From Haplodiscus bocki (lineage: Eukaryota): a stretch of DNA of 64,000 nucleotides. Positions 1 to 18,065 of this stretch are shown here, one piece after another; the stretch's first letter is position 1; the number at the start of each line of letters is the position of its first letter. The DNA lies in NCBI GenBank assembly GCA_965655095.1, contig OZ296650.1, forward strand, positions 50,964,001 through 51,028,000, read 5' to 3'. The position numbers and the translations under genes were made by a program. Under the pieces are notes generated by a model. That model saw nothing but the letters and a program-made list of their open reading frames with translations, did not search any database and was not told the DNA's origin.

Positions 1-362
1 TTCTGCAGAAAGTACGAAAATTTTTCTCTCAAAACGCGAAAAAATAATGAAAGTATAATTTTTCTCAAAAATTCAAAAATGCTTCTCTGGGCACGTAGAA
101 TGCAGTTTTGACAACCCAAAAGTCCTAAACTTTTCACTCAAATGCGGGAAACTTTATAAATTTATAATTTTTTTCTCCAAAACGTTCCTCTGGACAAGTA
201 TTGAAGTTTTTTTGCACAAAAAAATCAGAAAATTTTTAACTTTGGAAAAATTAGAAAAAATATGAAGAGTATTTTTTGGGCAAAAAACGTTTTCATTCTC
301 TTAAAAGGCATCATTAATGGAAGAGGAAGGAAAATATGCCGGTGGTAGCCGGTCGTTTGTTA
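1..362 (+). repeat. 3' part of a dispersed non-autonomous repeat (Helitron-like terminus)
   Basis: Ends in GGAAAATAT-GCCGG-TGGTAG-CCGG-TCGTTTGTT (hairpin 338-352). Related ends recur at about 1498-1532, 4176-4211, 6432-6470 and 32250-32291. The internal GTAGAATGCAGTTTTGACAAC unit recurs inverted at about 49220-49390. Confidence 0.5.
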
Positions 363-1224
363 ATACATAAGTTCATGCACATTTTATATTATTGTCAAAA
401 TGTGTGTAAAGTTTGAGAGTACTTCATGAATGGTCGTGGTCAACTTTCGTTTAAAATTCTTCGGAGAGTGTAACAATAGAGTCCGACTTGCTCTTTTGAA
501 GAAGAAGATTCAATTTACACCTATTGGCAGCAAGTCTGTTGTTAAAGTCATGTAATAGTCGAACTTTATCTGAAGTTTCATTCAAAAAAAGCTCAAAAAT
601 TAAAGCGCGTTTTGCTTCCATAATATCAAGGCATGATCCGTAACTTTCATAACCTATTATTACCAACACACTGCTGATTACACTCATTGATCAGCAGAAA
701 ATTAAGCAAAACAAAATCGAATTCGACTGTTTGATCCTTCAGGTTCCATAGTGCACATCAAGATGGAGTTTTACAGGGTCGCCTCAATTTCGCCCACATA
801 CCATTTATTTCAATTCAATTGAGTCTTAAATGGTTAGGGCTTCTGGCTTTGAAAACAGACTTTGAAAAGTGATGATCATAGCACCATCTTCCAGGGAAAT
901 ATATTCAGTATTTCTTAGTATCCTACATTTTTCGGATTAGACTAGAAATGGATGGTTCCGAAAAGAGTTGAACTATTTTCGGTGATAAGGTTCTGTGAGC
1001 CTCCTGACTTGGGAGTAATCTGTTTCGAAGTACCGTGGTAGAAGCACTTTTTGTCCTTAGAATTAGTACTCATAATTTTGTCAGTTATTATTTTTATTTT
1101 CTGCCCACATTAAGATACCGAAAAATCATCCACTCAACGCCGTTTTTTTACGTTTAATTGCCAACTGAAAATGTCCCAAGGTCCGATGGTTCTGAATTTG
1201 ATTTTTTTTCAATCCCCAAATTAT

Positions 1225-1535
1225 AACAAATTTGCCGTAGAATGCGACTGAAATAGAAAATATTTCTCAAATACGGACGTAGTTTGGGTTTTGAGAAAAA
1301 ATGTTTTTTTTTCAGAAAAAAAACTTCGTTCTTTTTTCAAAATCGGTCAAGGTGGAAAATTTGAATGCGTATCAAATATTATTTTCAAATGTCTGTTTTC
1401 CACCTAAATTGAAGTTTTGCAAAAAATCAGAAAAAACTTTCAATCTCGAATAAAAATAACGCTTTCATCCTTCTAAAAAGCATCTTTAACAAAGTTGGAG
1501 GGCGGAAAATATCCCAGGGGTAGTCGCGTGTTTTA
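1225..1535 (+). repeat. Copy of the same dispersed repeat family
   Basis: Contains AAATTTGCCGTAGAATGCGACTG (also at about 2090 and 31938) and ends in a degenerate GGAGGGCGGAAAATATCCCAGGGGTAGTCG version of the hairpin end. Confidence 0.5.
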
Positions 1536-2414
1536 TTGATATTAATGACAAATGTTCAATTTTCCGCAAGCGCAACATTTTCAAAATTGTGGACGATGCA
1601 GCTTGCAGGCAATTTTGTATCAAGTCAGCTTTTAGTACGAGAGTACCCGAACATTAAACCGTTTTAGCAAGAAGCCTGAGCTCCTTTCGAGCGCTTCCTG
1701 GTTTTGCTTCGTTTCCTCTGAAAGCCCCTTTGAGGCCATAATTTTCCACAACACCAAAGTGCCCCTACGTTTTTGTGCACAGCAAGACAATTTTTTCTTC
1801 CAGAAATATGACGGTCAAGCTGCTGAATGGAGCTGTTGCTGAAAGGTAAGCACGACGTGTTAGTCAAAGGTGATCATGATGTGTTAGTAAAATTTTTTCA
1901 CGCTTTGAATTGATAAAGTCCGTAGTCTAACAGCCACCTCGATTTTTTCCGCCATATGAGGGAAATTCATTCTCTCGCCGCGTGCTTTTTTTTCACTTTT
2001 TTACGTTTACCTGGCAATGGCCCGATTCAGGCAAGTTTTGCAAACTGCACGATTTCTAACTTTGAAATTTTTTTGCACCAAATTATAGCAAATGTGCTGT
2101 AGAATGCGTCGAAAATAGTAAAATTTCTTGAAATGCCTTTTTTTAAGAAAAAAGTACGAATTTTTACTAGAAATATTCGAATCAGAAAAGTAACAAATTT
2201 GTTGTAGCAGGCGTTTAAACGGGAACTAAATCTATACAGTAGTGATTTTAAGTAATGCGACTAAGCAATTTCGATACGCTTTACAAAATCCTAAGTGGAG
2301 AAGTAAATAATAGGAGATAAGAGTAAACAAAGGTACTCTGAGAAAGCTCGTTAAAAAGGCTACCACATGGTTATTTCATTTGCCAAAACAAGTACTTCAA
2401 AGATTTAGAAAATT

Positions 2415-3444
2415 GGGGGCAGGACAAAAGAGCCGATTTTAAATGAGACAAAATCGCCGATTTTGCAAACGGGACAAAACCGCCGATTTCGAAAATGAGA
2501 CAAAACCGCCGATTTTGAAAATGAGACAAAACCGCCGATTTCGAAAATGAGACAAAACCGCCGATTTCGAAAATAAGACAAAACCGCCGACTTTGTGAAA
2601 GAGAACAAATTGCTATCAAAACTGTTTCACTGATAAAAGCGTCTTGGCCTAATTATTTATATTATGCAATTCTATTGCTAATTACTATTATAAAATGAGA
2701 TACCACGAACTTAATGCAAATTCCTTCACTTTTTGCGGCTAAGAAATTTTCGAGAATTCCAGCACCAAAGATTTCATTGAAACCCTCGCTTCTATTTTAC
2801 CTAAATTTGTGATACCCACCCTCTATCTTTTGTGTACCAAGCTCCTCTGAATAATTAAAATTTCTCCTGAAAAAACTAAAACAACATTACCAAAAAATTC
2901 AGAAATGGTCATTTCGGATATTTTCGGTTCATGCAATTGAGTATCCATAAAATCAGAAAATTATACGGCGGAAAAATTAAAATAGGTTGTTTTTTGTACT
3001 AGTTTTCTTTAGTTTCATTGGCATTTCATTAGATGACAGAAAATTTAGTTTTGCAGATATTGGGATTATCAATTTTCATAATTTTTTGTTCGTGGCCGTC
3101 CAGAATTTAACTTGGCTTTTCACAAAAACTTAAATTTTGGTCGAATTTTTTTTACTTTGGGTATTTTGGGCTTAGTTATTTTGGGTTTGTTATTTTGCAG
3201 TATAACCATTTCATTACTATATTAGTAATTCATTTGCTCATTATCCGTAATTAGGCCAAGACGCTTTTATCTTGAACAAATTTTATCTTAGCAAAGACTA
3301 GCGATCTGTATTATTATGAATCGGCGATTTTGTCCCACTTTACAATCGGCGGTTTTGTCTCATTATCAAAATCGGCGATTTTGTCCCGTTTTCAAAATCG
3401 GCTGTTTTGTCCCACTCTAAAATCGGCGGTTTTGTCTCGCATCC
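2415..3444. mobile_element. Mutator/Foldback-like non-autonomous element nested in the Tc1-type MITE
   Basis: Direct repeat TAGAAAATT(G) on both sides (2406-2414, 3445-3453; 9-10 bp TSD). Long TIRs are built from a 26-bp tandem unit. A further inner inverted block GATAAAAGCGTCTTGGCCTAATTA lies at about 2632 and 3247-3270. Confidence 0.8.
2420..2600 (+). repeat. 26-bp subterminal tandem repeat GAGACAAAACCGCCGATTTCGAAAAT (about 7 copies; about 5 inverted copies at 3318-3440)
   Basis: Period of 26 read directly (units start at 2497, 2523, 2549). Confidence 0.9.
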
Positions 3445-4785
3445 TAGAAAATTGCGTCCCAAAGTTGAGTAAATAAACTATGCCAGCATTGCGAATAACG
3501 TCTAATTTTGGCAGTTTTCGTAAGAAATCTTGACAATGACACAAGATAGCAAGAAACAAATTACATAATTTGTTAGTTTTGGTTATTTCCCCGAGCTCTT
3601 ATATTTAACACTTTTTTCATAACTTTGAATTTTCAGAAGAAATTGCAAAAAGTAAAAGTATAATTTTAACATCCCATTTTAATACATCGATTTTCAAATT
3701 TAGTAGATTCAAGATGAATTTTGGAATCGTTTTTTATAACTTTTCCTCCGACAGATGATATCAGTTGTCGCAGAAATATAAGGGCATCTATTGATGAAGT
3801 AAGATTCCAATTATTAATTTTTTAAAGTTACGAAATTGTTGAAAGAATGAAAAATTTGGCCAAAAACGCATTTTATAGTTCTTGCTCTATTTGTTGGAAA
3901 TTTTTCAAACAAACACCACTATAATCTCTTAAAAATTCTAAGAATGTTTTATTTCTGGTACTTTTGTCCAAAATGATTATTCCCGAAGTTATTCGTGCTT
4001 TAAGTTGACCTATGCAATAAAGTTGTCGCATTAATTAAAATCACTACTGTATAAAGCCTTTGCCTTTTATTGACCAAATTTAGAGTTTTTTGAAAAATTG
4101 ATTTTTTGCTCAAAAAAACTAATTTTGCAGTTGAATGCCATTTTTTTCATCTAAAACGCAATTAAAACAAAGAGAGTGGAAAGCAGCCCGATGGTAGCCG
4201 GGCGTATTGTTGCAGATTGATGCGAAATGCAAGTGCTTTCTACAAAATCATTATTGCCTGCTTCCAGAAGAGGCCCGGTGGAATACAATCCAGCTAATTC
4301 TACGCACTGGGGATCCATTACAGTTGAAAAAACAATTTAATCACAACAAATTTAAAGAATACACCTACCATAATTCAAATTAGCCAAAACTAAATAAGTA
4401 TCTTTCTAACAACTGGTTTGCAAGCGTACACAAAGTAAACGGATATCTAATTACGAATTAACTTGAGTCTCGTGTATTGAGGTTGATTTTGGAGAAAGAA
4501 GTTTGGAAATTTAGAGAAAATTAAGATTTGAATTAAGCTTTAATACGAAGACCAAAAAGTGATAAAGACAATTTCAAAACCAAAAACCCATAGCTGTTGG
4601 TATAATAAGGAATAGCGCTCTCTATCTAATATGAAAGCATATCTGTATTTGAATTTTTGTTTGTTTGTGTTCACAATGGGGAAGCGAAATTCGGACGGAA
4701 TCGAGATTGCAACCCGCGTGCACAGCAGTCAGAAAGGGCTGACATGGCCAATGTATAAATATCCGATGAGTCAAGTGAAACACAA

Positions 4786-4967
4786 TTATTTTTCATCGTC
4801 AGAGGAAACAAGAGCTTTGAATGCTTCTACAAGTTCATGTGGGATCAATAAATTGGTGTCTGTGAGAGTAGTGCGGAAAACTTCAAGAAGTTTCAAACAT
4901 ATCAAGTCATACACGCGCGTTGTTGGATGCAGGAAATCTGACATGTCACCCTCGTCAATCTGCCCAT
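4786..4967 (-). CDS. PAFAH1B2: PAF-acetylhydrolase IB alpha-subunit homologue, exon 3 (last coding exon; missed by the ORF track)
   Basis: Acceptor ttttag at 4968. A phase-1 join gives DGQIDEGDMSDFLHPTTRVY...SSDDEK* (TAA 4786-4788), matching the SGNH block V DGTISHHDMYDYLHL of mammalian PAFAH1B2/3. Confidence 0.9.
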
Positions 4968-5170
4968 CTAAAACACAACATGCACAACACGTGAATCCTT
5001 AGTTGTCCAAGTTGTCCAACAGGTTGCATCTTTACAGATATTCGCACCCCTGACGAACACAAATCCGCTATTTTTTCGCCCCATATTTCAAAATAAATTT
5101 GGAAGAAAAAATATTCGATCGGTAAAGGCGTTTTTTGTCAATTTTTAATACTTGTAAAAAATTTAATAAA

Positions 5171-5231
5171 GAGGGTTTCGAACCACCAGTCTTCGACTTC
5201 GGAGACTCGTGACATTACCACCATTGACCGC
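5171..5231 (-). repeat. tRNA-derived SINE head or tRNA pseudogene fragment
   Basis: Minus strand reads GGTCAATGGTGGTAATG (A-box-like) ... GGTTCGAAACC (B box) at tRNA-like spacing; the cloverleaf is imperfect. Confidence 0.4.
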
Positions 5232-5636
5232 AATAATTCATGCACACTTTTCTGGAAAATCACGCTCATTTCCCCCCAAAAATCACACGAAAAATATACA
5301 CAGAAATCACTAATTCAGGCTTTTTACAGCTATATTTTCGGCATTTTTGGAACTATAATTCTTCTTTTTGATCTGAAAGAAATAAAGTCAGTCATAAGTT
5401 ATCAGATAGGAAAAAAACGATGGCAAATATTGCAAATTTAAGTTTATCTCAATTGATAGTTTGTTGTATTTTTCGCAAATATTTCTTGATCTATTTCAAA
5501 TTTGGTTCAAAAATCACGCTAATATACTGATTTCAGCTTAAAATCACGGCTTCTAATTGGTCCAAAGTTCACGCAAAAATCACGGCGTGAATTGATGCGG
5601 TCCCTAATTACCACTATATCATAACACTACAACAAA

Positions 5637-6416
5637 CAGTAGTGTCAGAAAAAAATGGAACCCTCATAAGTGAATTAATAATGAAACGCTACATATACTT
5701 CGGTAATACTCAAAAACAACTGAAAATCACAAGTTATGGTCGAAACAAAAGTTTCTTAGAAATTTATCTAGTTTACAATGGTCTTCCTTTGAAACTTCTA
5801 GGATCAATAGTATAGAAGTTAGGAGATTTTGCATCTCTATTTATTAAGATAGGAGGTTGACTTCGCATCACAACTTTCGATGTTTTAAGTATCTTCTACT
5901 CCGTTTTTGTTTACATTTCATGTACTGTTAAGATGTCTTTCATCTACTGATTACACTCACAAGTTGGCAGCTCCCCAGTGGTTACATTCCTTGAGAAAAA
6001 GTATCATTCCCAATGTTACTACGTTGTAAAGGTGGTCATGCATCAAGGAATGTCTATGTATTTTGATAGTGTAAACACTGGGGCGCTGCCAACTTCTGAG
6101 TGTAATCAGTAGATGAAAGGCATCTTAACAGTACATGAAATGTAAACAAAAATGGAGTAGAATGTACTTAAAACATCGAAAGTTGTGATGCATAGTCAAC
6201 CTATCTTAATACATAGAGATGCAAAATCTCCTAACTTCTATAATAATGATCCTAGAAGTTTCGAAGAAAGACCATTGTAAACTAGATAAAATTCTAAGAA
6301 ACTTTTGTTTCGAACATAACTTGTGATTTTTTGTTGTTTTTGAGTATTACGCAAGTATATGTATCGTTCCAGTATTAATTCACAAATAAAGGTTCCTTTC
6401 TTTTCTCACACTACTG
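5637..6416. mobile_element. Fold-back (palindromic) MITE with CAGTAGTG termini, in PAFAH intron 2
   Basis: About 350-bp arms (5637 to about 5986, and about 6071 to 6416) are near-perfect reverse complements. TA follows the right end. The terminal octamer matches that of the 2237-4049 element. Confidence 0.88.
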
Positions 6417-6714
6417 TAGATTTAATACACATGGGCGATAACAATGATGGTGCCAGCCGGCCGTCTTGTTTCAATTAAATTTAATCGAAAGTACTTCACT
6501 AGAAATCCACTTGCATACAAAAGAAGTAGCTTAACTGAAAGTAAGAATAACATTCAAACGAGCATGGTGACCGTAGCATAAAACTTTGTTGAAAAGCCCA
6601 TAATTGGGAACCAAAAAGCAGCCAAACCCTTCGTTAACTGATATCTTAATCAATTCATTTGAACGAAAGTCAATTTACAAAGTAAATAGATGCGAATCTT
6701 TTCTGATAACAAAT

Positions 6715-6921
6715 CCACCCCCCCCCCACAGTAGGAACTCAAAATTTAACGCTCTCCCTCCCCCCTCCCCAAGCAGAAGCGAACTCGTCTCTGATTGGCT
6801 AAAATTCACTCGCGCGTGATTTAAAACGTTACGACGCTTATTATTTCGCATATCCACTATGGTGGGTGGGGGGGGGGGGTCGAGTTAAATCAGTGGGGGG
6901 GGGGGGGGGGGGGGAGGAGGG
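6715..6921. repeat. Opposed C-rich and G-rich homopolymer tracts
   Basis: C runs at 6715-6770 and G runs at 6861-6921, with short inverted matches (ATTTAAC / GTTAAAT). Confidence 0.6.
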
Positions 6922-6963
6922 ATTAAAAGAAAAGATCCATAGATGCAAGTACCAGCGGCTAAC

Positions 6964-7164
6964 CTGATTGCACGAGATCAAGGTCATCAACATCAATGAA
7001 AACACAGTTGGGAACTTCGGTGAGTAAAACACTAAGTTGTTTGTTTATCTCATCATTTTTCAGTCTGAGACTATTCGGTCGAGGCCCACGGGGTAACAAG
7101 CCCAAAAAGAGAAGCTTGGACCGGGGGTACTGCGTGGAGAGACATTTCATGACACTCACAACAC
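6964..7164 (-). CDS. PAFAH1B2: PAF-acetylhydrolase IB alpha-subunit homologue, exon 2
   Basis: Acceptor ggcag at 7165, donor TCAG|gttagc at 6963. Encodes GVVSVMKCLSTQYPRSKLLFLGLLPRGPRPNSLRLKN, matching the LGLLPRG..PN.LR.KN family motif. Confidence 0.92.
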
Positions 7165-7951
7165 CTGCCACAATCTAAAGCACTCGTTGATATACTACTC
7201 GGTCACTACCTATATTAATACACAGTAACGGAAGTCGACCCAAAAATTCTAATGTGAATAGACAGAACAGCCCAATTAACTTAAACAGGAGCTTTTATTT
7301 ATAGGCTGAATACTCCACATGAAATCACTGCACCATAACACCATTTTAGCAGACAATGACTTTTCTTGAAACTTATTTGCATAATTCCAATGAAAATTAT
7401 GAGATAGTTAATATTCTAAGATTCTTTCGTCGGCGCTTTTCAATTAAGCAAAAGTGACCGACTATTACAATGGCTAATTTTTTTTCACCAAGTATTCGTC
7501 AAAAATGAAGTCGATTTCGTGAAAGAGTGGTGATAAAAAAGCTATTTTTTACTACCAAATAGTACCAGTGCAGATAACTTGCAAAAGTAAAATTTGAAAA
7601 CACCAAAGGCCCTCCCTACGATTTTTTTCGGCAATGTGAGAACAGTTTTGTGAGCAAAAACTTTTCTTGGAAAAAACCATAACATTTTCAAAACATCAGC
7701 CTCCCCCTTCAGGTACATTGAGCCTTACGGGCGGTGCCGACTTGGGTCGTTCTCAGCTCCTTCCATTTTAATACGAAAGAAAAATCGGAGAAGCTTTTTT
7801 TGCATTTTACTGCCCTTACTATTAAGAAACTTCCTTTTCCCCATTTGTACATGAGTGCAAATAAAGTTTCGCATTTTTGCCATTTGCGTAACTTAAAGAC
7901 ACAAAGACAAGCAAATTCATGGTAATAAAGATCACAAATGTGAAGTTGTAC

Positions 7952-8357
7952 CACCACTAACTTCTTCGGTGTTGGAGTCATACATTTCAGTTCCAACGTG
8001 CACAACGAACACTTTGGGTTTGAGACCTTCAAATGGTTCGATCCAATCAACATTTCCCTGGTGAGGAGAAGCCCACTGTTGAATGCGCCATAAGATATGT
8101 TGGGTCGCATCACCAGGAATACTGAAATTAACGGCGTGCATCGGAGCCAAAACTTTGTTCCAGGCAGAGTTTAAACCCAAGTGGTACAAAATGGTATCTC
8201 CAACAAAGACTATCTCTGGATCACTTCTTGTTGCTTTACGGAGATGGCACATGTGTTGGGCCATCCACCTGTCATCTCCATGAATATCTTCTCGTTCCGT
8301 CGCAACACATGTTTTCAAAGATTGGTAACCGTTCATACAACAATTGTTCGAAGACAT
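7952..8357 (-). CDS. PAFAH1B2: PAF-acetylhydrolase IB alpha-subunit homologue (SGNH hydrolase fold, co-orthologue of PAFAH1B2/3), exon 1; spliced CDS 789 nt = 262 aa
   Basis: EDIHGDDRWMAQH, PEIVFVGDT, HAVNFSIPGDATQHILWRI and KPKVFVVHVGT align with PAFAH1B motifs. Donor G|gtacaa at 7951. Exon lengths 406+201+182 keep frame. Confidence 0.92.
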
Positions 8358-8364
8358 TCAAACT

Positions 8365-8370
8365 CTGAAA
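8365..8370 (-). promoter_or_regulatory. TTTCAG splice acceptor 7 nt upstream of the PAFAH ATG (candidate trans-splice or alternative acceptor)
   Basis: Minus strand reads aaaacatttcag|agtttgaATG. The same hexamer precedes the RPL11 ATG. Confidence 0.55.
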
Positions 8371-8458
8371 TGTTTTCTGGTGAAATTTCAAGGTTACTTG
8401 CAAGATTTCTGTTTCGTCAAGCGGGCATTTCCGAGAAAAAAGAACAGGCATTAGAAAC

Positions 8459-8894
8459 TTAATTCATAATGATACCATCATATTTCTGTTGGAACCATTT
8501 CATTGATTCATCCTTGCCAACAAGGTGGGCCTTTCCAACACGGTTCTGACAACGTCGTCTTTTAGACACAGAGTAACCATTTCGGCCCAACACAACGAAG
8601 AAGTGCATTCCGTAGATGCCAATACCAGGATCGTATTTGATTCCCAAATCAATGTGCTCTTGGATTCCAAACCCAAAGTTTCCAGTATCGGAGAAGTTGC
8701 ATTTTCTCAATTCATATTCTTTTACTTTCAGACCCCTCTCGAGAAGTTCTTCAGCTTTCTCGCCCCGAACAGTGCAGTGAACAGCAATCTTTTCATTCCT
8801 TCGGATGCCAAAAGAACGGATGGTGTATCTGGCCTTCGAGGATACAGGCGTCTGGCCAGTAAGCTGCTCCAACACCTTTGAGGCTCGAGTCAAC
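8459..8894 (-). CDS. RPL11: 60S ribosomal protein L11 (uL5), coding exon 2
   Basis: [42 protein letters not shown]...[24 protein letters not shown] is diagnostic. Acceptor ttgtag at 8895; stop TAA 8459-8461. Confidence 0.97.
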
Positions 8895-9110
8895 CTACAA
8901 CATTGAAATTAACTAGTTGTACAAGTACGGAAGCGTAAGAGTATCATTTACTTGTGGATACCATAAAAATTCACAAGATGTAATTATAAGCAATGTATTG
9001 TTAGGACCATCGTTATAAGTAACAATAGAGCTAATTAAAAGGTAAGGAAAACCGCTAACAATACTAGTAAAGCCCACTTAGTTTTCCCTTGGTCTTCCAC
9101 TAAGTTTTCG

Positions 9111-9748
9111 CTGACTAATCGCGAATATTGCCATTTTTGCAGCTCCATATCTCAAGACAACAAAGAATACTTAAAATTAAAATTTTCTTACATCTTCATC
9201 TAGCTTACAACAGTTTGTTTGAAAATCTTGCCATCATTATTAGTTTGAAAGTTACATACTGTCATTTATTGTAGCGTTTTCGAGACTTCCAATTTTTAAC
9301 TGGTTAACATTTTCGAGCAAAATTGTACCCAAGCGACGCCTCAATCTCGTGAAGCTTGGGGTTTGTTCCAATTCCAGGAGTAATCGAAATTCCGAGAAAG
9401 GTATTCCTATAAAAAAATGAGATTCTACATGCATTAGGCTGCGAAAATGGTTTTTCTCAAGATTTCGCATATTTCTGGAACTGAAGCAAATCATAAGCTG
9501 TAATATTCTAGATGTCGGTTGGACACAATTTTCCTCAAAATTGCTTTTTTAACACAGGTCAAAATTTGAAAATACACAAAAACGCCAAAAACTGAGTCTG
9601 TAACATTCAAACTAATGATAGCAGGATTTTCAAAGAACTAATGTGAACTATACGAAAATTTAGGGTACCTTTAATATTCGGCTTTTAATAGCTTTTGCAA
9701 TTTTGAGATAACGAGCTCCAAAAATGTCAATGTTTCGCGCTCAGTCAG
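9111..9748. mobile_element. Diverged inverted-repeat MITE in the RPL11 intron
   Basis: About 155-bp arms: CTGACTAATCGCGAATATTGCCATTTTTGCAGCTC...TTAGTTTGAAAGTTACA at the left matches the reverse complement of about 9590-9748. Confidence 0.7.
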
Positions 9749-10114
9749 ATTCTTCTATCACATCACTGTAGTAGCCCCGTGACGCACGCTAAAGCTCCAT
9801 GACGCACGCGTTACAACTTCCTGGATTCAGAAATTTCACACATGGAAGGAAACGCGTAATTAACTACAGATAAAAATGGCGAGACAGCTCTCACAGTCGA
9901 ACACTCCCACTTTCGATAGATAGTCAGGGTGTCGAGGATACTTCATATTTCTCAAAATATAGCAGTATGGATTGGAAGATGAATACATCTGGGACTTTGG
10001 TTATTTGAGTTATCAAAATTCATAAATTCATCAAGATTGAAGCTACTCTGTTACATTCCTCTGCTTAAAATATTTAGCTAGAAAATTATGAAGTTTCAAA
10101 ATAAATGTTCCAAC

Positions 10115-10233
10115 CTGTCACCACTTTCTCCAACACCGATGTTCAGACAGAGTTTGAGAATCTTGATTTCCCGATTAGGGTTGCTTTTCTTGCTATCGGA
10201 CAGGGTGGACTTCTTTTCACCTTTCTTTACCAT
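10115..10233 (-). CDS. RPL11: 60S ribosomal protein L11 (uL5), coding exon 1; spliced CDS 555 nt = 184 aa
   Basis: MVKKGEKKSTLSDSKKSNPNREIKILKLCLNIGVGESGDR. Donor GACAG|gttgga at 10114 joins exon 2 in phase 2 to give GDRLTRA; intron 8895-10114. Confidence 0.93.
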
Positions 10234-10247
10234 TTTTTCAGTACGAT

Positions 10248-10329
10248 CTGAAATTATATTAATATAGAGCTCTGTTTGGACATTTAGATATTTTTTCAAG
10301 CGTTTCGGACACGGTTTGGAGTCACTTAC
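10248..10329 (-). other. Putative 82-nt 5'UTR intron (or outron) of RPL11
   Basis: GTAAGT at 10329-10324 and a TTTCAG acceptor ending at 10248, 14 nt before the ATG. Confidence 0.5.
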
Positions 10330-17541: not shown

Positions 17542-18065
17542 GTTCGGACAATGTATATTGAATTGGGCAATTGTAGTTGATTAGCCGAGAAGTGATGTCC
17601 ACTTCCACTCCAGTTACTCCACGGCCAATTCACACATAATATCTCAAACTATTTAATAAGTTTATCACAACAATTAGGCTTTGGTTTTGGTTCGCAGTAT
17701 GCATCTACATAATGGAAAATTGACGGAACGTACTTTTCATTGGCATACTTATTGGGGTTGTAAGAGGCTTGCATATGCATGGCTTTGGTTTCAAGTAGGC
17801 ATCCATATAGTGACATATGAGTTGAATTTGCCTAGTATAGGCAAACAACTTTGCTGTTTTTGATTGTTTCAGGGCAGCTTAGACATCAATATAAAGCAAA
17901 ATTAGTCGATCTCGTTTGAATTTTCTGTACTAACTCCGAGTTTGTATTACTTGTTCTTCGGGTCGAAAAAATTTTAACACAAAACCTGGAAAGCATGTCT
18001 CAGCCATTACAAACAACTTGGAACAGCATTGAAATCGAAAAGGTACTCGAGAAGACAACACACAT

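What the first reader, a model, noticed from the sequence alone, without database searches (positions are those of the whole stretch)
8358..8458. Operon-like RPL11 to PAFAH1B dicistron with a 101-bp spacer
Seen: same-strand genes with stop-to-start distance of 101 bp, in a genome that is otherwise spacious and TE-rich. The spacer has no AATAAA or ATTAAA, a U-rich tract (TTCTTTTTTCTC), two upstream ATGs (one at 8451 opens an out-of-frame ORF overlapping PAFAH), and a TTTCAG acceptor 7 nt before the ATG. The only donor-like GT nearby (8397) would give an implausible 33-nt intron. RPL11 has the same TTTCAG 14 nt before its ATG and no evident 5'TOP pyrimidine tract. Known: nematodes, tunicates and some flatworms resolve polycistrons by spliced-leader trans-splicing, ribosomal protein genes are typical members, and in Ciona-type operons the acceptor itself defines the upstream 3' end. 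Inference: a polycistronic unit resolved by trans-splicing, which would be notable if this lineage is not known to have operons.
Basis: partly seen in the sequence, partly recalled or inferred. Interest (0 to 1): 0.75.

Follow-up and report, generated by a model that had tools for sequence, protein, structure and literature searches.

The report
Candidate trans-spliced gene pair, acoel worm
In an acoel worm genome, a ribosomal protein gene (RPL11) is followed 101 bases later by a PAFAH1B-like gene. RNA shows that RPL11 receives the known acoel spliced leader at the predicted site, and the second gene has the same kind of site, so a two-gene operon is likely but co-transcription is unproven.

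Summary
RPL11 stops at 8461-8459. The PAFAH1B-alpha-like ATG is at 8357, and TTTCAG acceptors lie 7 nt and 14 nt before the two ATGs.

The genome is an acoel related to Symsagittifera and Convolutriloba. SL trans-splicing is already published for this lineage (S. roscoffensis, 30% of genes). Operons are not mentioned in the papers I could search.

- **RPL11, shown:** a spliced RPL11 cDNA contig in public run X5 carries the last 9 nt of that leader. It is joined exactly at the predicted acceptor, with the exon starting at 10247.
- **PAFAH, inferred:** I found no RNA for it from this species. Its acceptor matches 48 leader-bearing acoel transcripts (A after the leader in 39; leader to first ATG usually 0-11 nt). 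An acceptor-like Yn-AG is present before the start in five acoel taxa. A distant orthologue's transcript starts with a leader-like sequence 6 nt before its ATG.
- **Gene order:** RPL11 then PAFAH, same strand, holds in all five taxa, with spacers of 101, 132, about 160, about 600 and 1365 bp.
- **Not tested:** co-transcription and the RPL11 poly(A) site.

The verdict is a probable SL-resolved dicistron (about 0.55), a new member of a known kind. The scan flagged similar candidate operons elsewhere in this genome (s1-369371, s1-376630).

The parts
10248..10253 (-). TTTCAG trans-splice acceptor of RPL11. The first exon base is 10247.
   Evidence: Sequence. The RNA contig in run X5 carries the last 9 nt of the SL joined to ATCG... 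at this point.
10115..10247 (-). RPL11/uL5 exon 1: 14-nt 5'UTR after the leader, ATG at 10233, 40 codons.
   Evidence: Translation and Pfam Ribosomal_L5. X5 record 27 covers it.
8895..10114 (-). RPL11 intron, 1220 nt, GT..AG.
   Evidence: It is skipped in X5 record 27 (joint 8890/10111, ambiguous by the shared GTTG) and in none of DNA runs X1-X3.
8459..8894 (-). RPL11/uL5 exon 2 with stop TAA at 8461-8459.
   Evidence: Pfam Ribosomal_L5_C E 5e-19. It is 88% identical to Convolutriloba macropyga uL5.
8358..8458 (-). 101-nt spacer. It must hold the RPL11 3'UTR and poly(A) site and the PAFAH acceptor. It has a U-rich tract at about 8445-8434, upstream ATGs at 8451 and 8428, and no AATAAA or ATTAAA.
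   Evidence: Its first ~45 nt and last ~65 nt align to the ~600-bp spacer of relative L012.
8365..8370 (-). TTTCAG, the predicted SL acceptor of the PAFAH1B-like gene. The first exon base is 8364, an A, 7 nt before the ATG.
   Evidence: Sequence. A Yn-AG lies 0-30 nt before the start in L012, S. roscoffensis, L010 and C. macropyga. The site matches the junction statistics of 48 SL-bearing transcripts. There is no RNA from this species.
7962..8357 (-). PAFAH1B-alpha-like (GDSL) exon 1. The first ATG is at 8357, the conserved ATG at 8336, and the donor GT at 7961-7960.
   Evidence: PDB 1FXW/1VYH E 5e-22. tblastn against acoel orthologues. Gene model.
6964..7174 (-). PAFAH1B-like exon 2.
   Evidence: tblastn gives 79-83% identity to the C. 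macropyga and S. roscoffensis exon. Splice sites.
4786..4967 (-). PAFAH1B-like exon 3 with the stop codon. The protein is 262 aa from ATG 8357, or 255 aa from ATG 8336.
   Evidence: tblastn gives 83-84% identity. Joining the exons gives an intact ORF.
17649..17679 (-). A 31-nt copy of the acoel spliced leader at the 5' end of a LINE. It is not an SL RNA gene. It shows that this genome's lineage uses this leader.
   Evidence: 32-nt search pattern with one mismatch, the last base; the 31 leader bases match exactly. 0 matches expected by chance. It is followed by TTTGAG, not GT. The LINE ORFs carry PHD, Exo_endo_phos and RVT_1.

Best explanation
RPL11 and a PAFAH1B-alpha-like gene form a two-gene unit in an acoel worm, and it most likely works as follows.

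1. RNA polymerase II starts upstream of RPL11.
2. The RPL11 5' end is replaced by the 31-nt acoel spliced leader at TTTCAG|A, with the exon starting at 10247. This step is shown.
3. RPL11 is cleaved and polyadenylated somewhere in the 94 nt between its stop codon and 8365. This step is inferred.
4. Polymerase continues into the next gene.
5. The PAFAH message gets its capped 5' end by addition of the same leader at TTTCAG|A, with the exon starting at 8364. This removes the two spacer ATGs that would otherwise block its translation. The step is inferred from the site's signature, its presence across taxa and an orthologue transcript.

On this reading it is an SL-resolved dicistron of the nematode or flatworm kind. 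Co-transcription itself has not been shown.
For: - **Taxon.** The lineage is an acoel. uL5 is 88% identical to Convolutriloba macropyga and 85% to Symsagittifera roscoffensis.
- **Known biology.** S. roscoffensis trans-splices 30.2% of its genes with a published leader.
- **Leader in this genome.** That leader sits in the window at 17679-17649.
- **RPL11 site proven.** X5 record 27 is an intron-less RPL11 cDNA with 4 mismatches in 274 nt. Its clipped 5' letters read ATTAAATAG+ATCGTAC on the RNA strand, that is, the leader's 3' end joined at 10247. DNA runs X1-X3 lack this joint.
- **RPL11 in another acoel.** RPL11 transcripts L007 and L008 begin CTTATTAAATAG|TCGAG ATG.
- **Junction signature.** Of 48 metatranscriptome contigs that start with the leader, 39 have A as the first exon base. 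The median distance from the leader to the first ATG is about 8 nt. The PAFAH site (TTTCAG|A, 7 nt, ATG) fits this. Chance would give such a site in about 1.6% of cases.
- **Acceptor in every taxon.** A Yn-AG lies 0-30 nt before the PAFAH start in five acoel taxa.
- **Orthologue transcript.** L013 begins with a leader-like 21-mer, 15 of 21 identical including the final TTAAATAG, 6 nt before its ATG.
- **Conserved order.** RPL11 then PAFAH, same strand, holds in all five taxa and in both tandem copies in C. macropyga, while the flanking genes differ.
- **No room.** 101 nt must hold a 3'UTR, a terminator, a promoter and a 5'UTR. The ATG at 8451 opens an overlapping out-of-frame ORF that would spoil translation of any unprocessed 5' end.
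Against: - No RNA from this species covers the spacer or PAFAH. X5 depth is 0 from 7700 to 8427. So neither leader addition at 8364 nor read-through RNA has been seen.
- The spacer is about 600 bp in L012 and 1365 bp in C. macropyga. That is room for an independent promoter, so tight spacing is not required for the pair to persist.
- No canonical poly(A) hexamer lies in the 101-nt spacer.
- The L013 leader variant was not seen as a recurrent terminal leader among the first 120 scan hits.
- The RPL11 evidence is one low-depth contig (5.9) in a run of another organism, with only 9 leader bases.
Confidence: 0.55

Rival explanations
1. Both genes are SL trans-spliced, but PAFAH has its own promoter, for example in the RPL11 intron, in exon 2 or in the spacer. 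Its outron merely overlaps RPL11. The adjacency persists because a very short gap offers few rearrangement breakpoints, not because of co-transcription.
For: Trans-splicing frees a gene from needing its promoter next to its 5' end. In C. macropyga (1365 bp) and L012 (about 600 bp) the spacer is long enough for a promoter. C. macropyga has an ATTAAA about 65 nt after the RPL11 stop, so RPL11 probably ends far upstream of the PAFAH acceptor there.
Against: The pair stays linked in five taxa and through a tandem duplication, even where the gap is large, while the flanking genes differ. In the window, polymerase leaving a highly expressed RPL11 has only about 94 nt before it reaches the acceptor, so read-through RNA carrying that acceptor is hard to avoid.
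Confidence: 0.27
2. The acceptor at 8365 is used in cis. Some transcripts from the RPL11 promoter splice from the RPL11 exon-1 donor (10114), or from another upstream donor, to 8364. This would be a shared-5'-exon locus, not trans-splicing.
For: A canonical donor exists at 10114. C. macropyga PAFAH has three RefSeq protein accessions with one identical protein, which could reflect alternative 5' UTRs. A GTGAGT donor lies in the L012 spacer about 95 nt after the RPL11 stop.
Against: Joining exon 1 to 8364 gives ...GAC AGA GTT TGA. That is a 43-codon upstream ORF ending 1 nt before the PAFAH ATG, which is poor for translation. The L013 orthologue transcript has a leader-like 5' end, not RPL11 sequence. 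The only RNA contig seen uses the normal RPL11 splice.
Confidence: 0.08
3. These are ordinary, independently transcribed neighbours with a TSS in the spacer. The TTTCAG before the PAFAH ATG is a chance match or start-codon context.
For: No RNA from this species has been seen for PAFAH. Compact neighbours occur in any genome.
Against: The chance of such a site is about 1.6%. An acceptor-like Yn-AG is present before the start in five taxa, although most of the spacer does not align. A TSS upstream of 8428 would put one or two upstream ATGs in the 5'UTR, including an overlapping out-of-frame ORF. The site matches the acoel junction signature.
Confidence: 0.07

Closest known systems
SL trans-splicing in the acoel Symsagittifera roscoffensis (Martinez et al. 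2022, PMC9911081)
   Same: The first 31 nt of the published leader are identical here. It is the same animal group. The orthologous RPL11-PAFAH pair sits about 160 bp apart in S. roscoffensis itself.
   Different: That paper reports trans-spliced genes (30.2%) but never mentions operons or polycistrons. The window comes from a different species (uL5 85% identical). The published 32nd base, A, is probably the first exon base. SL RNA genes in L115 and L077 read ...AAATAG|GTAAGT or GCAAGT.
Caenorhabditis elegans SL2-type operons
   Same: Same-strand genes about 100 nt apart. There is a U-rich tract between the upstream stop and the downstream acceptor. The downstream mRNA would be capped by a spliced leader. 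A ribosomal protein gene is a member. The gene pair is conserved across species.
   Different: No second, specialised leader is known in acoels. The upstream gene is also trans-spliced with the same leader. No canonical AAUAAA lies in the spacer. Co-transcription is not shown here.
Flatworm and tunicate operons (Schistosoma, Macrostomum, Ciona, Oikopleura), which use a single leader
   Same: One leader would serve both monocistronic and downstream genes, as would be the case here.
   Different: Ciona and Oikopleura operons have almost no intercistronic sequence. Here it is 101 nt, and up to 1365 nt in relatives. Acoels are unrelated to true flatworms.
Catalytically inactive PAFAH1B alpha homologue of Drosophila (from my own knowledge, not checked here)
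   Same: The acoel protein has GDT in place of the catalytic GDS. It has GTEMY in place of GTNNH, which holds the oxyanion Asn.
   Different: The Asp and His positions (D-F-L-H) appear to be kept, by my own comparison with the human sequence from memory, not a tool alignment (exon 3 translation). Activity is untested.

Membership tests
SL trans-spliced gene (RPL11) | The mature mRNA starts with a non-genomic leader joined at a 3' splice acceptor. | tested here: met
   X5 record 27 is spliced cDNA whose clipped 5' end is the last 9 nt of the leader, joined at 10247. The genome has ATAATTTCAG at that place. A relative's transcripts L007 and L008 carry 12 leader nt before the RPL11 ATG.
SL trans-spliced gene (PAFAH1B-like) | The mature mRNA starts with the leader joined at the acceptor in the spacer. 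| tested here: inconclusive
   The acceptor TTTCAG|A lies 7 nt before the ATG and matches the 48-transcript signature. An acceptor-like site is present in all five taxa. The distant orthologue transcript L013 has a leader-like 5' end. No RNA from this species covers the site.
SL-resolved eukaryotic operon | The organism has SL trans-splicing. | tested here: met
SL-resolved eukaryotic operon | Two or more same-strand genes with a short intercistronic distance. | tested here: met
   101 nt from stop to ATG, and 94 nt from stop to the acceptor.
SL-resolved eukaryotic operon | A single promoter and a polycistronic precursor RNA spanning both genes. | not testable with these tools
   No RNA run of this species was served. 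X5 has no coverage of 7700-8427.
SL-resolved eukaryotic operon | The upstream gene's 3' end forms inside the intercistronic region. | tested here: inconclusive
   No AATAAA or ATTAAA in the spacer; the only near-match is AGTAAC at 8398. No transcript with a poly(A) tail was found. Relative L010 has AATAAA 13 nt before its acceptor.
SL-resolved eukaryotic operon | Gene order and orientation are conserved among relatives (supportive, not defining). | tested here: met
   Five acoel taxa plus a tandem duplicate in C. macropyga. The flanking genes are not shared.
SL-resolved eukaryotic operon (nematode SL2 subtype) | A specialised second leader is used for downstream genes. | not tested
   Only one leader is published. 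The L013 leader variant comes from a distant species and cannot be assigned.
PAFAH1B alpha subunit (GDSL/SGNH hydrolase) | Sequence homology to PAFAH1B2/3. | tested here: met
   PDB 1FXW_F E 5e-22 over residues 18-133. RefSeq names the orthologues 'PAFAH IB subunit alpha2-like'.
PAFAH1B alpha subunit (GDSL/SGNH hydrolase) | Catalytic Ser in the GDS motif and oxyanion Asn in GTNNH. | tested here: not met
   GDT and GTEMY in the window. The same or similar changes occur in all acoel orthologues.

The most novel reading that the evidence does not exclude
This would be the first documented operon in Xenacoelomorpha: an RPL11-PAFAH1B-like dicistron resolved by the single acoel spliced leader and kept together in at least five acoel species. 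Together with the other head-to-tail clusters flagged in this genome, it would mean that acoels, like nematodes, tunicates, flatworms and chaetognaths, evolved or retained polycistronic transcription.
Probability: 0.5. Interest if true: 0.6.

Novelty: new member of a known kind. Interest (0 to 1): 0.45.

Why it matters
SL trans-splicing and operons have a patchy distribution in animals. Whether operons follow automatically once a lineage gains a spliced leader is an open evolutionary question.

Acoels sit at a key position in bilaterian phylogeny, and so far only leader trans-splicing has been reported for them. A conserved, tightly spaced and demonstrably leader-using gene pair gives a concrete locus to test. 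It is also present in the RefSeq genomes of S. roscoffensis and C. macropyga.

Public RNA-seq and 3'-end data could settle in an afternoon whether acoels have operons. The result also bears on annotation, because transcript assemblers will fuse such pairs.

Tried and rejected
- **RNA runs for this species.** Two searches found only DNA-like runs X1-X4 plus one RNA-like run of another organism, X5. Laying them down gave the RPL11 5' end but nothing on the spacer or PAFAH.
- **SL RNA gene in the window.** The single leader copy at 17679-17649 is followed by TTTGAG and a LINE, not by a GT donor. Rfam gave nothing at gathering thresholds.
- **A longer true leader.** I considered that 11 nt (CCAAAACCAAA) before that leader copy might belong to it. 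I rejected this because transcripts and SL RNA genes elsewhere show other bases there. The possible 9-bp target duplication is at chance level.
- **Other copies of the LINE 5' end.** None in the window or fetched loci. The exact ORF1 protein is not on record.
- **Downstream S. roscoffensis genes in the window.** The F5/8-type-C and UPF0542 genes are absent here, so the unit has only two genes in this species.
- **Earlier 'probably coral' suggestion.** Not supported; the closest proteins are acoel.
- **Big representative-protein search and structure prediction.** Not used, because the proteins were already identified.

Full report
**What is in the sequence**

Both genes lie on the minus strand.

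- **RPL11/uL5.** It starts at ATG 10233. Exon 1 runs to 10115 and is followed by a GT..AG intron of 1220 nt (10114-8895). Exon 2 runs from 8894 to the TAA at 8461-8459. The joined ORF is an intact uL5.
- **Spacer.** It is 8458-8358, exactly 101 nt.
- **Second gene.** The ORF starting at ATG 8357 matches the alpha subunits of PAF acetylhydrolase IB, with PDB 1FXW at E 5e-22. It continues in two further exons, 7174-6964 and 4967-4786, to give an intact protein of 262 aa.
- **Conserved start.** Relatives start at the position of the second in-frame ATG, 8336 (MNG...). That gives 255 aa, against 254 and 253 aa in the RefSeq orthologues.

- There is no AATAAA or ATTAAA in the spacer.
- The U-rich tract is present.
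- Spacer ATGs lie at 8451 and 8428, and the first opens a 59-aa out-of-frame ORF across the PAFAH start.
- TTTCAG lies 7 nt before the PAFAH ATG and 14 nt before the RPL11 ATG.
- A GT at 8397 would make only a 33-nt intron.

TTTCAG occurs at 7.9e-4 per position in this window. One within 20 nt of a given ATG is therefore expected about 1.6% of the time.

**Whose genome it is**

The best named uL5 match is Convolutriloba macropyga at 88%. The Symsagittifera roscoffensis RefSeq protein falls in the cluster of the 85% hit. So this is an acoel of that group, but neither of those two species.

Another note guessed coral, and the proteins do not support that.

**What is already known**

The S. roscoffensis genome paper reports SL trans-splicing of 30.2% of genes and gives the leader sequence. 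Neither the paper nor its preprint contains the words operon or polycistron. My literature searches found no report of operons in acoels or Xenacoelomorpha.

**The leader in this genome**

The published leader occurs once in the window, at 17679-17649 on the minus strand. The search used the 32-nt published sequence. The only mismatch was the final base, so 31 leader bases match exactly, and 0 matches are expected by chance.

It is not an SL RNA gene. It is followed by TTTGAG and then by a LINE with a PHD-type ORF1 and an endonuclease plus reverse-transcriptase ORF2. The simplest reading is a retro-copied, trans-spliced LINE RNA.

SL RNA genes found in other DNA read ...AAATAG|GTAAGT (L115) or GCAAGT (L077). 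The leader exon therefore ends at AAATAG. The published 32nd base, A, is the usual first base of the acceptor exon.

**RNA evidence for RPL11**

Runs X1-X3 are DNA, because the whole stretch, intron included, lies in one contig.

Run X5 comes from another organism. It contains one 291-nt contig (record 27, 4 mismatches) that joins RPL11 exon 1 to exon 2 across the 1220-nt intron. None of the DNA runs shows this joint, so the contig derives from spliced RNA.

Its 16 clipped 5' letters read ATTAAATAG ATCGTAC on the RNA strand. The last seven equal 10247-10241. The aligner clipped early, and I infer an extra TAC in that individual. The first nine are the 3' end of the leader, whereas the genome has ATAATTTCAG there.

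Independently, two intron-less RPL11 contigs from another acoel begin CTTATTAAATAG|TCGAG ATG (L007 and L008; the protein C-terminus is ...DGVIMN).

**Evidence for the PAFAH acceptor**

No RNA of this species covers it. X5 depth is zero from 7700 to 8427. Three indirect lines support it.

1. **Junction signature.** A scan of metagenome and metatranscriptome contigs returned 48 contigs that begin with the canonical leader. The first base after the leader is A in 39, G in 7 and T in 2. The distance from the leader to the first ATG is 11 nt or less in 31 of 48, with a median of about 8. The window site, TTTCAG|A then 7 nt then ATG, fits this exactly, as does the proven RPL11 site.
2. **An acceptor in every taxon.** A pyrimidine-rich AG lies just before the PAFAH start in every taxon where I could read the locus:
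   - L012: TATTTTAG|AGTGA ATG.
   - S. roscoffensis: GTTTTCAG|TGTTGA ATG, and also ATTCAG|ATG.
   - L010: TATTATAG, 26 nt before the ATG.
   - C. macropyga: CGTTTCAG, 27 nt before the ATG.

   The acceptor-proximal part of the spacer aligns between the window and L012, although L012 carries about 500 extra bases in the middle.
3. **An orthologue transcript.** L013 is an intron-less, full-length PAFAH1B-like transcript from a more distant relative. It has the same GDT motif and ends LVSSDDER where the window protein ends LVSSDDEK. It begins with a 21-mer that matches the leader at 15 of 21 positions, including the terminal TTAAATAG, placed 6 nt before the ATG.

**Conservation of the pair**

RPL11 followed by PAFAH on the same strand is found in all five taxa:

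| Locus | Spacer |
|---|---|
| Window | 101 nt |
| L010/L011 (GCA_013332895.1 and a metagenome scaffold) | 132 nt |
| S. roscoffensis | about 160 nt |
| L012 | about 600 nt |
| C. macropyga, both tandem copies | 1365 and 1357 nt (97.9% identical) |

Flanking genes are not shared:

- S. roscoffensis has two further same-strand genes downstream that are absent from the window.
- L012 has a calpain gene called downstream; I did not search the window for it.
- C. macropyga has no other called gene within 10 kb.

**How it most likely works**

- **Shown:** the lineage uses this leader, and RPL11 is trans-spliced at 10247.
- **Strongly inferred:** PAFAH is trans-spliced at 8364. That would remove the two spacer ATGs.
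- **Inferred only:** one transcript from the RPL11 promoter feeds both genes.

The argument for co-transcription is physical and comparative. Ninety-four nucleotides between the RPL11 stop and the next acceptor leave no room for a separate termination zone and promoter. Polymerase leaving a highly expressed ribosomal protein gene will therefore present that acceptor to the trans-splicing machinery. In addition, the pair has stayed together while its surroundings changed.

The argument against is that two relatives have spacers of 0.6-1.4 kb, which could hold a promoter. C. macropyga also has an ATTAAA soon after the RPL11 stop.

My estimates are:

| Reading | Probability |
|---|---|
| Co-transcribed dicistron | about 0.55 |
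| Trans-spliced, but with its own promoter | about 0.27 |
| Cis-spliced from a shared exon | about 0.08 |
| Ordinary neighbours | about 0.07 |

**Comparison with known systems**

It would work like a C. elegans or flatworm operon: a spacing of about 100 nt, a U-rich tract, and a leader added to the downstream gene.

It differs from the nematode SL2 type in that no second leader is known and the first gene takes the same leader. It differs from Ciona and Oikopleura operons in having a real spacer.

The defining feature of an operon, a polycistronic precursor, was not testable here. I therefore file it as a candidate, not as a member.

**Verdict**

- Trans-splicing in this lineage is already published, so that part is not new.
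- An acoel operon would be a new member of a known kind, and it can be tested directly with existing public S. roscoffensis data.
- The scan has flagged similar head-to-tail clusters elsewhere in this genome.

Noticed in passing
window 17679-~14254 (minus strand): A LINE (ORF1 with PHD finger at 17454-16735; ORF2 with endonuclease and RT at 16718-14943, decaying to about 14273). Its 5' end begins exactly with the 31-nt acoel spliced leader, followed by TTTGAG and not a GT donor. It looks like a retro-copied, trans-spliced LINE RNA. LINEs here may use the host leader to obtain a capped 5' end.
   Followed up: partly
L052 (position 839, minus strand), L074 (795-814), L073 (position 176, minus strand): Other acoel-like DNA contigs (GCA_013332895.1 and a metagenome) also carry the leader joined directly to ORF-like sequence with no GT donor. 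So leader-bearing retrocopies seem to be common in acoel genomes.
   Followed up: no
L115 (position 3420, minus strand) and L077 (position 2857, minus strand): Apparent SL RNA genes: the leader followed by GTAAGT (L115) or GCAAGT (L077), then ATTCCAACCCTATTTTTAAG. This fixes the leader's 3' end at AAATAG, one base shorter than the published 32-mer.
   Followed up: partly
window 8357-7962 and orthologues P0126-P0132: The acoel PAFAH1B-alpha-like proteins have Thr in place of the catalytic Ser (GDT for GDS). They lack the oxyanion Asn (GTEMY or GTENY for GTNNH). The Asp and His of the triad look retained, though I judged that by eye and not from an alignment. The protein is probably a non-catalytic or altered subunit throughout the group.
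   Followed up: partly
L009 10001-19793 (S. roscoffensis OY783236.1): Four same-strand genes lie in a row: RPL11, PAFAH-like, F5/8-type-C and UPF0542. The gaps are 162, 620 and 201 bp. This may be a longer unit in that species. The last two genes are absent from the window.
   Followed up: partly
L001 and L014 (C. macropyga OZ077310.1, about 113 kb apart): The whole RPL11-PAFAH pair is tandemly duplicated, and the two spacers are 97.9% identical. The pair was copied as a unit.
   Followed up: partly
L012 5381-5980: The closest relative's spacer carries about 500 extra bases. They begin near a consensus donor (GAG|GTGAGT, about 95 nt after the RPL11 stop) and end at the PAFAH acceptor. This could be an insertion, or an intron within a read-through transcript.
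   Followed up: no
window 10241-10243 versus run X5: The RNA contig appears to have an extra TAC in the RPL11 5'UTR (ATCGTACTAC...) compared with the assembly. It is probably a strain polymorphism, inferred from the clipped letters only.
   Followed up: no
window 6700-6920 (PAFAH intron 2): Long C and G homopolymer runs flank a short unique segment. A similar C-run/G-run pair sits in the C. macropyga RPL11 intron (L001, about 10160-10250). It may be a small foldback element.
   Followed up: no
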